Of a DNA stretch of 48,802 bases, positions 43,055-43,514 are shown in pieces. A program made the translations under genes and the position numbers. This stretch comes from Octopus bimaculoides. Its lineage: Eukaryota. Numbering within the stretch: the stretch's first letter is position 1; each line of letters opens with the position of its first letter. The stretch spans positions 6,229,914 to 6,278,715 of the forward strand of contig NC_068999.1 in the NCBI RefSeq assembly GCF_001194135.2, written 5' to 3'. Under the pieces are notes generated by a model that was not told the origin of the DNA, did no database searches, and saw only the letters and a list, made by a program, of their open reading frames with translations.

Positions 43055-43514
43055 ACCGTGCAGAGTCGCACCGATAACCAGCTGGTTATCTGCCTGGGGT
43101 TAAACTAGTAGTAACTTGAAACATCCACTTTGATGTGGCGAATGGCTTTACTGTTTAGTACAGTTACTATGCTGTTCCCTCCATGAGATTCTACAATTCG
43201 CTATTTTGCCTGTTGCAAATCAGTGACCGATGGTCACGTTGTTTACAATATATTATTAACGTTAGCGGATCTGTTTATCGCTCTGGCGTACTGGTACTCG
43301 CGACTGAGGACGTGCCAAATAGCTCGAAACTGCGTCAGTCTTGCGATCCTGATACCCGCTAGAAGGTGGTGGGGTTCGCCCACCCCCTCTCCTAACAATA
43401 TATTATATATAAATGGTGCAGAGTCGCAACGATAACCAGCTGGAAGAGAATCTGCCTGGTGTTAAGCCAATACTAACACTCAACAGCCACTTTGATGTGG
43501 CGACTGGCTTTACT
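43051..43514 (+). mobile_element. Candidate non-LTR retrozyme: ~358-nt unit with ~100-nt terminal redundancy and one hammerhead
   Basis: 43051-43152 repeats at 43409-43514 (about 80% identical by eye). The hammerhead lies between the repeats. No ORF. Confidence 0.6.
43293..43349 (+). ncRNA. Extended type I hammerhead ribozyme, Schistosoma Sm-alpha-like
   Basis: GG-UAC-UCGCGA-CUGAGGA-C-GUGC[CAAAUA]GCUC-GAA-ACUG[CGU]CAGU-C/UUGCGA-U-CC: canonical CUGANGA and GAAA core, 6-bp stem I, 4-bp stem III, GUC triplet (predicted cut after 43340). Confidence 0.82.

What the first reader, a model, noticed from the sequence alone, without database searches (positions are those of the whole stretch)
43293..43349. 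Extended type I hammerhead ribozyme with Schistosoma Sm-alpha-like tertiary contacts
Seen: GG-UAC-UCGCGA | CUGAGGA | C-GUGC-CAAAUA-GCUC | GAAA | CUG-CGU-CAG-UC/ | UUGCGA-U-CC. All core positions are canonical, with a 6-bp stem I (one G-U), a 4-bp stem III and a GUC triplet. Established: the fast S. mansoni hammerhead uses a stem I UAC bulge (opposite a U, closed by GG/CC) docking with a CAAAUA loop II. Both elements appear here at the same positions, which is very unlikely by chance. Defects: a U-U mismatch in stem II and an extra C after A9. Inference: a genuine, possibly still active, fast hammerhead lineage in an octopus-like genome, unrelated in sequence to the minimal PLE hammerheads elsewhere in the window. 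I cannot verify whether it is already catalogued.
Basis: partly seen in the sequence, partly recalled or inferred. Interest (0 to 1): 0.88.

Follow-up and report, generated by a model that had tools for sequence, protein, structure and literature searches.

The report
Decayed hammerhead ribozyme in retrozyme-like repeat
The sequence is a real self-cleaving hammerhead RNA motif of the classic animal type, but it sits in an old, mutated copy of a well-known kind of small mobile repeat, so it is an ordinary find and probably a poor or dead ribozyme.

Summary
43293-43349 (+) reads exactly as written and is the only site in the window that fits even a relaxed hammerhead descriptor (0.001 hits expected per simulated window). 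Rfam's type I model Hammerhead_HH9 aligns end to end (43286-43363) at 28.3 bits, E=0.005 for the window, which is below its gathering score of 52.

The peripheral elements match the Schistosoma-derived N79 ribozyme: GUAC/UCC internal loop, 6-bp proximal stem I, 4-bp stem II and loop II CAAAUA.

The context is a non-coding ~358-nt unit (45% GC) present as 1.37 tandem units (43038-43529) next to a (TA)n tract, with only one hammerhead. This fits the published animal non-LTR retrozymes: type I hammerheads in 150-450-bp repeats, copied as greater-than-unit-length cDNA from circular RNA.

The two repeat copies are only ~81% identical, so the insertion is old. Three features argue against a fast ribozyme:
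- An extra C lies between A9 and G10.1. C at this site was strongly detrimental in another hammerhead.
- Stem II has a U-U mismatch.
- A competing helix is favoured by 9-13 kcal/mol.

No relatives could be retrieved, so family consensus, copy number and activity are untested. Verdict: a new member of a known kind, of low interest.

The parts
43038..43397 (+). First, complete ~358-360-nt repeat unit. It is non-coding and 45.5% GC, and it contains the only hammerhead.
   Evidence: Direct repeats D16/D17, self-BLAST, pairwise alignment, GC content.
43398..43529 (+). Second, partial repeat unit (about 0.37 unit, ~81% identical to 43038-43170). It ends before the position where a second hammerhead would lie.
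   Evidence: No further degenerate copy was found upstream or downstream.
43288..43293 (+). Distal stem I, 5' strand (GUACUG).
   Evidence: Pairs with 43350-43355: G-C, U-A, A-U, C-A mismatch, U-G, G-U.
43294..43297 (+). Stem I internal loop, 5' side (GUAC). It contains the UAC 'bulge' of the tertiary contact.
   Evidence: Same letters and the same 6-nt distance from the core as in N79/Schistosoma. UAC is also at that distance in the HH9 consensus and metagenome locus L027.
43298..43303 (+). Proximal stem I, 5' strand (UCGCGA).
   Evidence: 6 bp with 43341-43346, including one G-U wobble at 43302/43342.
43304..43310 (+). Core C3-A9 (CUGAGGA).
43311..43311 (+). Extra C inserted between A9 and G10.1.
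   Evidence: Shown as an insert in the Rfam alignment. It is unique to the window in the 4-sequence alignment. It pairs with G12 (43326) in the minimum-energy fold.
43312..43325 (+). Stem II (GUGC/GCUC, with a U43313-U43324 mismatch) and loop II CAAAUA (43316-43321).
   Evidence: Loop II is identical to that of N79.
43326..43329 (+). Core G12 A13 A14 plus A15.1 (GAAA).
43329..43339 (+). Stem III (ACUG/CAGU, 4 bp) with the triloop CGU.
43340..43341 (+). Predicted cleavage site: after C17 (43340), before U43341.
   Evidence: GUC triplet aligned to the model's cleavage position. Cleavage itself was not tested.
43341..43346 (+). Proximal stem I, 3' strand (UUGCGA).
43347..43349 (+). Stem I internal loop, 3' side (UCC).
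   Evidence: N79 has UCCA at the same place.
43350..43355 (+). Distal stem I, 3' strand (UGAUAC).
43302..43307 (+). GACUGA, the 5' arm of a competing helix with UCAGUC (43335-43340) that destroys stem III and sequesters C3-A6.
   Evidence: Minimum-energy folds.
43010..43053 (.). (TA)n tract at the 5' junction of the repeat. The tract continues left of the later MITE insertion, at 42623-42631.

Best explanation
This is an old, mutated genomic insertion of a small non-coding, hammerhead-bearing retroelement of the animal 'non-LTR retrozyme' kind, which the literature links to Penelope-like elements.

In an active family the cycle would run as follows, taken from the literature and not shown here. 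Tandem units are transcribed by read-through. Each type I hammerhead folds, with its GUAC/UCC internal loop docked on loop II CAAAUA, and cleaves after C17. This releases a ~360-nt monomer with a 5'-OH and a 2',3'-cyclic phosphate. A host tRNA ligase (RtcB) circularises the monomer. A reverse transcriptase, probably from a Penelope-like element, copies the circle into cDNA longer than one unit, and the cDNA integrates.

What the window shows directly is the product expected of that last step. There are 1.37 tandem units (43038-43529) abutting a (TA)n tract, with one complete hammerhead.

My inference is that this copy is a relic. With a single hammerhead it could at most cut a read-through transcript once and could not release a circle. 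Its ribozyme is probably slow or inactive because of the extra C43311, the U-U mismatch in stem II and a strongly favoured competing fold.
For: Genuine hammerhead:
- Full-length match to Rfam HH9, 28.3 bits, E=0.0047 for the window.
- Unique descriptor hit, with 0.001 expected.
- Peripheral elements identical to the Schistosoma type: UAC at 6 nt from the core, loop II CAAAUA and a 4-bp stem II.

Retrozyme-like context:
- A ~358-nt unit present in 1.37 tandem copies.
- GC 45.5%.
- No coding capacity: no protein homologue for any of six frames and no ORF of note.
- No other Rfam RNA in the unit.

Published definition. Type I hammerheads with loop-loop contacts lie in 150-450-bp tandem repeats of <50% GC, without LTR, PBS or PPT (PMC7229834). 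The cDNA is longer than one unit because the template is circular (PMC7761336). Dispersed 'monomer' derivatives are common (bioRxiv 10.64898/2026.07.22.740005). Penelope-like elements insert as partial tandems with a bias for microsatellites, including (TA)n (PMC8557442).

Decay and impaired ribozyme:
- The repeat copies are 81-85% identical.
- C at the A9/G10.1 insertion site is reported as strongly detrimental (PMC3705267).
- All 11 natural insertions at that site in the metagenome hammerheads are U.
- The hammerhead fold scores -3.4 to -4.6 kcal/mol against a minimum energy of -14.7 to -17.3. In the controls, N79 scores -24.0 for both and the HH9 consensus -16.5 against -18.7.
Against: - No second copy of the unit or of the hammerhead was found in the window or in any collection I could search. 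Those collections hold almost no animal genomic DNA, so the multi-copy, tandem nature of the family is inferred and not shown.
- The defining tandem of at least two hammerheads is absent here.
- The circular unit is only weakly more structured than shuffles (z=-1.6, 62% paired), whereas retrozyme circles are described as highly self-paired.
- No target-site duplication could be defined, because both junctions are TA-rich.
- The Rfam gathering score is not reached.
- Secondary-structure energies ignore tertiary contacts and co-transcriptional folding, so they cannot prove inactivity. A hammerhead with a U-U mismatch in helix II still cleaves slowly (HHR_Amex2, 22% in 1 h).
Confidence: 0.6

Rival explanations
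1. This is a still active, fast hammerhead of a live lineage. It cleaves after C43340 in vivo, and the extra C and the U-U mismatch are tolerated family features rather than damage.
For: All invariant core bases and both tertiary-contact elements are intact. Natural hammerhead families do carry one extra nucleotide at this very position (CChMVd). A natural retrozyme hammerhead with a U-U mismatch in helix II still cleaves.
Against: The inserted base is C, which was strongly detrimental in CChMVd, and not U. C43311 pairs with G12 in the predicted fold. A competing helix is favoured by 9-13 kcal/mol. The surrounding repeat has diverged by ~19% between its two copies. At that level of decay the intact core is unremarkable: with ~10% change per copy, 11 bases stay unchanged with probability ~0.3 (my arithmetic). 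There is only one hammerhead at the locus.
Confidence: 0.12
2. This is a fragment of the terminal pseudo-LTR of an autonomous Penelope-like element, or of another hammerhead-bearing element such as an Sm-alpha-type SINE, rather than a retrozyme proper.
For: Partial-tandem architecture and insertion next to (TA)n are hallmarks of Penelope-like elements. Retrozyme consensus sequences in frogs are sister to PLE pseudo-LTRs, so the line between the two is thin. There are weak pol III A-box-like (TGGCGTACTGG, 43285-43295) and B-box-like (GGTTCGCCCAC, 43372-43382) strings, seen by eye.
Against: PLE hammerheads are described as minimal variants that lack helix III or the loop-loop contacts. This one has a 4-bp helix III and the full contacts. 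No reverse-transcriptase or GIY-YIG ORF adjoins it. The box-like strings have 1 and 2 mismatches, and I estimate about 0.15 such A-box matches by chance in the unit. No tRNA-like gene is found.
Confidence: 0.2
3. This is a chance resemblance with no hammerhead ancestry.
For: It falls below the Rfam gathering score, and no relatives were found.
Against: The descriptor expectation is 0.001 per window before the tertiary elements are counted. In addition there is an exact CAAAUA loop, GUAC placed 6 nt before the core and UCC directly after stem I, which together have a probability of about 1e-8 (my arithmetic). The covariance-model match is full-length.
Confidence: 0.01

Closest known systems
Schistosoma mansoni Sm-alpha (Sm1) type I hammerhead and its engineered derivative N79
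   Same: Type I topology and 6-bp proximal stem I. GUAC on the 5' side and UCC on the 3' side of the stem I internal loop. 4-bp stem II starting G10.1-C11.1. Loop II CAAAUA. GUC cleavage triplet. (N79 sequence in PMC12550524; alignment.)
   Different: All three helices differ in sequence. N7 is G rather than U. There is an extra C after A9 and a U-U mismatch in stem II. The loop's 3' side is UCC rather than UCCA. Stem III is a natural 4-bp triloop hairpin. The hammerhead fold is not the minimum-energy fold. There is no sequence similarity outside the motif.
Animal non-LTR retrozymes (Cervera & de la Pena 2020, PMC7229834), for example the ~350-390-bp Mytilus repeats and 220-240-bp Acropora repeats
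   Same: A canonical type I hammerhead with a stable helix III, inside a non-coding repeat of a few hundred bp with GC below 50%. No LTR, PBS or PPT. Greater-than-unit-length arrangement.
   Different: Only 1.37 units and a single hammerhead at this locus. Copy number, tandem arrays and circular RNA are untested. The predicted circle is only modestly structured. The Mytilus hammerheads lack most of the archetypal loop nucleotides, whereas this one has them.
Rfam Hammerhead_HH9 (RF02275), the intronic type I hammerhead of amniotes
   Same: It is the best-scoring Rfam family, with a full-length alignment. It has UAC 6 nt before the core and a CAAAAA/CAAAUA-type loop II.
   Different: 28.3 bits against a gathering score of 52. 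The flanks are not conserved. HH9 members are single, conserved intronic copies and not repeat-borne.
Minimal hammerheads of Penelope-like elements
   Same: Type I topology, association with retroelements, and a possible shared mobilising machinery. Some carry one extra nucleotide after A9.
   Different: PLE motifs lack a real helix III and the loop-loop contacts, and their extra nucleotide is U. None was found in this window.
CChMVd (+) hammerhead with the extra A10
   Same: One extra nucleotide exactly between A9 and G10.1.
   Different: It is a type III viroid ribozyme, and its extra base is A. Replacing that A by C was strongly detrimental, and C is the base found here.

Membership tests
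Hammerhead ribozyme, type I | Conserved core: C3 U4 G5 A6 N7 G8 A9, G12 A13 A14, the A15.1-U16.1 pair, and H17 not G. | tested here: met
   CUGAGGA at 43304-43310, GAA at 43326-43328, A43329-U43339 and C43340. One extra C (43311) interrupts the A9/G10.1 junction.
Hammerhead ribozyme, type I | Three helices around the core, with helix I open-ended. | tested here: met
   Stem I has 6 bp plus a distal helix. Stem II has 4 positions, one of them a U-U mismatch. Stem III has 4 bp.
Hammerhead ribozyme, type I | Loop II / stem I internal-loop elements that make the tertiary contact. | tested here: met
   GUAC/UCC and CAAAUA, identical in letters and position to N79. That the contact actually forms was not testable.
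Hammerhead ribozyme, type I | The hammerhead fold is thermodynamically accessible. | tested here: not met
   The hammerhead secondary structure scores -3.4/-4.6 kcal/mol against a minimum energy of -14.7/-17.3. Controls fold correctly or nearly so. The energy model ignores tertiary contacts.
Hammerhead ribozyme, type I | Self-cleavage after H17. | not testable with these tools
   Needs in vitro transcription of 43280-43360.
Rfam Hammerhead_HH9 (RF02275) / clan CL00010 | Score at or above the curated gathering threshold. | tested here: not met
   28.3 bits against 52. A second clan member scored lower and was suppressed.
Animal non-LTR retrozyme | A canonical type I hammerhead inside a 150-450-bp repeat unit. 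| tested here: met
   The unit is ~358 nt.
Animal non-LTR retrozyme | Head-to-tail tandem of at least two units, each with a hammerhead, so that a monomer can be excised. | tested here: not met
   Only 1.37 units and one hammerhead, with no further copy on either side. This fits the published 'monomer derivative' class.
Animal non-LTR retrozyme | Non-coding, without LTR/PBS/PPT, and GC below 50%. | tested here: met
   No protein homologue in six frames. GC is 45.5%. No tRNA-like element. PBS and PPT were not searched for specifically.
Animal non-LTR retrozyme | Many copies per genome. | not testable with these tools
   The source genome is not available. Nothing was found in metagenome, viral or prokaryote collections or in the protein database.
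Animal non-LTR retrozyme | Expressed as a highly self-paired circular RNA. | tested here: inconclusive
   The circular fold gives -96.8 kcal/mol with z=-1.6 and 62% paired. Expression was not testable.
Penelope-like element pseudo-LTR | Adjacent RT/GIY-YIG ORF, and minimal hammerheads in tandem. | tested here: not met
   No such ORF. The hammerhead is canonical and not minimal.

The most novel reading that the evidence does not exclude
The locus is a fossil of a retrozyme family that is still active in this genome, possibly the first described in cephalopods if the genome is one. The family's consensus hammerhead would keep the full Schistosoma-type loop contacts. The competing helix GACUGA/UCAGUC, which survives in-silico repair of all three defects, would be a built-in conformational switch. 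It would hold the ribozyme off in the mature circle and allow cleavage only during transcription.
Probability: 0.12. Interest if true: 0.4.

Novelty: new member of a known kind. Interest (0 to 1): 0.2.

Why it matters
The find adds one more, probably dead, example to a class described since 1987 in newts, 1998 in schistosomes and 2020 as retrozymes. Two points have modest value. It shows that the archetypal UAC/CAAAUA tertiary pair also occurs in this genome, whereas mussel retrozyme hammerheads lack most of it. And such decayed copies fall below Rfam's gathering scores, so routine annotation misses them. A genome-wide follow-up could show whether an active circular-RNA-producing family exists here.

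Tried and rejected
1. Rfam at gathering thresholds: no match in the window. The only meaningful sub-threshold match is HH9. The other sub-threshold hits are microRNA models matching microsatellites.

2. Search for other copies in the window: none found by BLAST, by Smith-Waterman against both flanks or by descriptors.

3. Metagenome scan with a generic Schistosoma-type pattern. It returned 120 loci, most of them chance matches, and none is homologous to the 492-nt element. It did yield PLE-type minimal hammerheads that carry an extra U.

4. Six-frame translations of the unit, concatenated as a single protein query, to catch ORFs called on sister copies: no hit. Exact-product look-ups of two ORFs also found nothing.

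5. Viral and prokaryote-genome scans with element-specific strings. They gave nothing, or in two cases chance hits without a hammerhead.

6. Candidate second hammerhead at 22078 (CUGAUGA...GAAA). It has poor helices and no Rfam match at E<=10, so I rejected it.

7. A SINE reading based on pol III A/B boxes. The strings are within chance expectation and ARAGORN finds no tRNA-like gene, so I did not adopt it.

8. Target-site duplication. It could not be determined, because both junctions are TA-rich and a MITE has since inserted into the left (TA)n tract.

9. Pfam on neighbouring transposon-like ORF fragments: no hits.

10. A covariation test was not possible with a single family member. MAFFT misaligned the 3' halves of the four-sequence comparison, so I made no pair counts.

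11. The primary Schistosoma papers (PMC4447102, PMC108972, PMC3203546) are not held. I took the N79 sequence from PMC12550524 instead.

Full report
**Observation.** They parse as follows:
- GG-UAC-UCGCGA, the stem I 5' strand;
- CUGAGGA, core C3-A9;
- an extra C (43311);
- GUGC / CAAAUA / GCUC, stem II and loop II, with a U43313-U43324 mismatch;
- GAAA, which is G12-A14 plus A15.1;
- CUG-CGU-CAG-U, stem III;
- C17 (43340);
- UUGCGA-U-CC, the stem I 3' strand.

Stem I has one wobble, G43302-U43342.

**Not chance.** A relaxed hammerhead descriptor allowing a 0-1 nt insertion after A9 and one stem II mismatch hits only this site on either strand. In 1000 second-order Markov simulations of the window it hits 0.001 times per window. 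A looser descriptor that also admits minimal hammerheads with a vestigial helix III again finds only this site. Neither test uses the exact CAAAUA loop or the GUAC/UCC internal loop, which lower the chance probability by many further orders of magnitude.

**Covariance-model evidence.** Nothing in the window reaches an Rfam gathering score. With E-value reporting, Hammerhead_HH9 (RF02275), a type I model, aligns over its full length (1-77) to 43286-43363 at 28.3 bits. The E-value is 2.4e-5 on 251 nt, 6e-5 on 621 nt and 0.0047 on the whole window. The gathering score is 52, so routine annotation would not report it. The alignment shows C43311 as an insert and marks non-standard pairs in stem II and in the distal helix.

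**Peripheral elements.** The N79 ribozyme, engineered from Schistosoma Sm1 and printed in PMC12550524, reads GCAG-GUAC-AUCCAG-CUGAUGA-GUCC-CAAAUA-GGAC-GAAAC...GUC-CUGGAU-UCCA-CUGC.
- The window has GUAC (43294-97), a 6-bp proximal stem I, a 4-bp stem II opening with G-C, CAAAUA, and UCC (43347-49) directly after stem I.
- It is closed by an imperfect distal helix, 43288-93 with 43350-55.
- In a four-way alignment with N79, the HH9 consensus and a metagenome hammerhead (L027), the UAC, the core, G10.1, CCAAA-AG and CGAAAC columns are invariant. The extra C is unique to the window.

**Context.**
- *Repeat structure.* The hammerhead lies in a ~358-nt unit (43038-43397). A partial second copy (43398-43529, 81-85% identical) follows and ends before a second hammerhead would occur. 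That makes 1.37 tandem units. No further degenerate copy lies on either side, and no other copy exists in the window.
- *Coding and other RNAs.* The unit is 45.5% GC against ~35% in the flanks. It has no ORF with any homologue and no other Rfam RNA on either strand.
- *Junctions.* The left junction is a (TA)n tract, and a mariner-type MITE later inserted into that tract.
- *Neighbourhood.* The surrounding sequence is made of microsatellites, transposon debris and assembly gaps, with 5231 N in the window.

**Comparison with what is known.**
- Cervera & de la Pena (PMC7229834) showed that most classical type I hammerheads of animals lie in tandem repeats of 150-450 bp with <50% GC and without LTR, PBS or PPT. 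They named these non-LTR retrozymes. The elements are expressed as 170-400-nt circular RNAs after hammerhead self-cleavage and RtcB ligation.
- The model predicts cDNAs longer than one unit, because the template is circular (PMC7761336).
- Those elements insert as partial tandems with a bias for microsatellites, including (TA)n (PMC8557442).
- The giant squid genome paper lists 235 Rfam Hammerhead_1 loci (PMC6962438).

The window's element matches this class in unit size, GC, lack of coding capacity, hammerhead type and greater-than-unit-length architecture. It fails the 'two or more hammerheads in tandem' criterion. Its predicted circle is only modestly structured (z=-1.6).

**Is it active?** Several results argue against 'fast'.
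1. *The extra base.* It sits exactly between A9 and G10.1. In the CChMVd (+) hammerhead an extra A there lowers the rate moderately. Replacing that A by C or G has major detrimental effects, and U raises the rate 3-4-fold (summarised in PMC3705267, citing De la Pena & Flores 2001). In the metagenome loci fetched, the 11 sequences that satisfy a strict hammerhead descriptor all have one inserted base there, and it is always U. Here it is C, and C43311 pairs with G12 (43326) in the minimum-energy fold.
2. *Stem II.* It has a U-U mismatch. A natural retrozyme hammerhead with such a mismatch cleaves only 22% in an hour as a monomer.
3. *The competing fold.* The hammerhead secondary structure scores -3.4 kcal/mol for the 57-mer and -4.6 for the 72-mer, against minimum energies of -14.7 and -17.3. 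The competitor pairs GACUGA (43302-07) with UCAGUC (43335-40), which removes stem III and sequesters C3-A6. Removing C43311, repairing stem II and turning the wobble into G-C still leaves -11.0 against -19.1. The controls behave differently: for N79 the hammerhead fold is the minimum (-24.0), and the HH9 consensus shows -16.5 against -18.7.
4. *Age.* The two repeat copies differ by ~19%, so each has changed by roughly 10%. At that rate an intact 11-base core is unremarkable (my arithmetic gives a probability of ~0.3).

These are predictions. The energy model ignores tertiary contacts and co-transcriptional folding, so only an assay can settle activity.

**Limits.** I could not reach the source genome or any animal genome collection. 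All of the following searches gave no relative of the unit:
- the metagenome scan;
- the viral and prokaryote-genome scans;
- a concatenated six-frame protein query;
- exact ORF look-ups.

Family consensus, copy number, covariation within the family, expression and the identity of the organism therefore remain untested.

**Verdict.** This is a genuine hammerhead-derived motif of the classical animal type I kind. It lies in a decayed insertion, longer than one unit, of a retrozyme-like repeat. It is a new member of a known kind, most likely a catalytically impaired relic, and of low interest.

Noticed in passing
window 42632-43006: A deleted mariner-type element (MITE-like). Its terminal inverted repeats are CAGGGTGATTCAAAAGTC and GACTTTTGAATTACCCTG, with one mismatch, and TA flanks it on both sides. 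It is inserted inside the (TA)n tract that borders the hammerhead repeat. An internal reading frame (42661-42924...PLDFYVWGLLKGMVYRGKIKDINHLKECI...) looks by eye like a transposase C-terminus, but Pfam gave no hit.
   Followed up: partly
window 43073-43090: A perfect 18-nt palindrome, GATAACCAGCTGGTTATC, in the first repeat unit. In the second copy it is broken (...CCAGCTGGAAGAGAATC...).
   Followed up: no
window 43361-43390: A G+C-rich hairpin just 3' of the hammerhead (GGUGGGG-UUCG-CCCACC core, -16.8 kcal/mol, z=-2.1). It contains a weak pol III B-box-like string, GGTTCGCCCAC. A weak A-box-like string, TGGCGTACTGG, lies at 43285-43295. Both are within chance expectation.
   Followed up: partly
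window 41093-41286, 44711-44903, 45105-45263, 45319-45411: A family of ~90-190-nt interspersed repeats, 71-81% identical (D11-D15), sharing ...ACTGGTACTTAATTTATCGACCCCGAAAGGATGAAAGGCAAAGTCGACCTCGGTGGAATTTGAAC.... They look like a SINE, but ARAGORN finds no tRNA-like gene.
   Followed up: no
window 43784-43987, 44043-44364, about 3900-4116, and the 216-bp tandem repeat at 4319-4757: ORF fragments that by eye resemble the C-terminal tails of LINE reverse-transcriptase proteins (for example ...VAVPIIVGALGTVSKNLEKY... and ...GRPTTRCLDDI...). They are decayed, and Pfam gave no hit.
   Followed up: partly
window 22067-22112: CUGAUGA...GAAA with weak flanking complementarity. It is the only other core-like site with short spacing. 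It has poor stems and no Rfam hammerhead match at E<=10, so it is not a supported ribozyme.
   Followed up: yes
whole window: There are 5231 N in many assembly gaps and a very high microsatellite load (127 Tandem Repeats Finder rows). These produce about 260 spurious sub-threshold Rfam microRNA matches.
   Followed up: no
loci L005, L013, L046, L055, L068, L077, L078, L108, L115 (metagenome contigs; the Ga01233xx contig names suggest termite-gut samples, which I did not check): Minimal Penelope-type hammerheads of the form CUGANGA-U-stem II-GAAA-CAUG/UAUG-UH. All carry an extra U between A9 and stem II. They presumably derive from eukaryotic, possibly host, DNA.
   Followed up: partly
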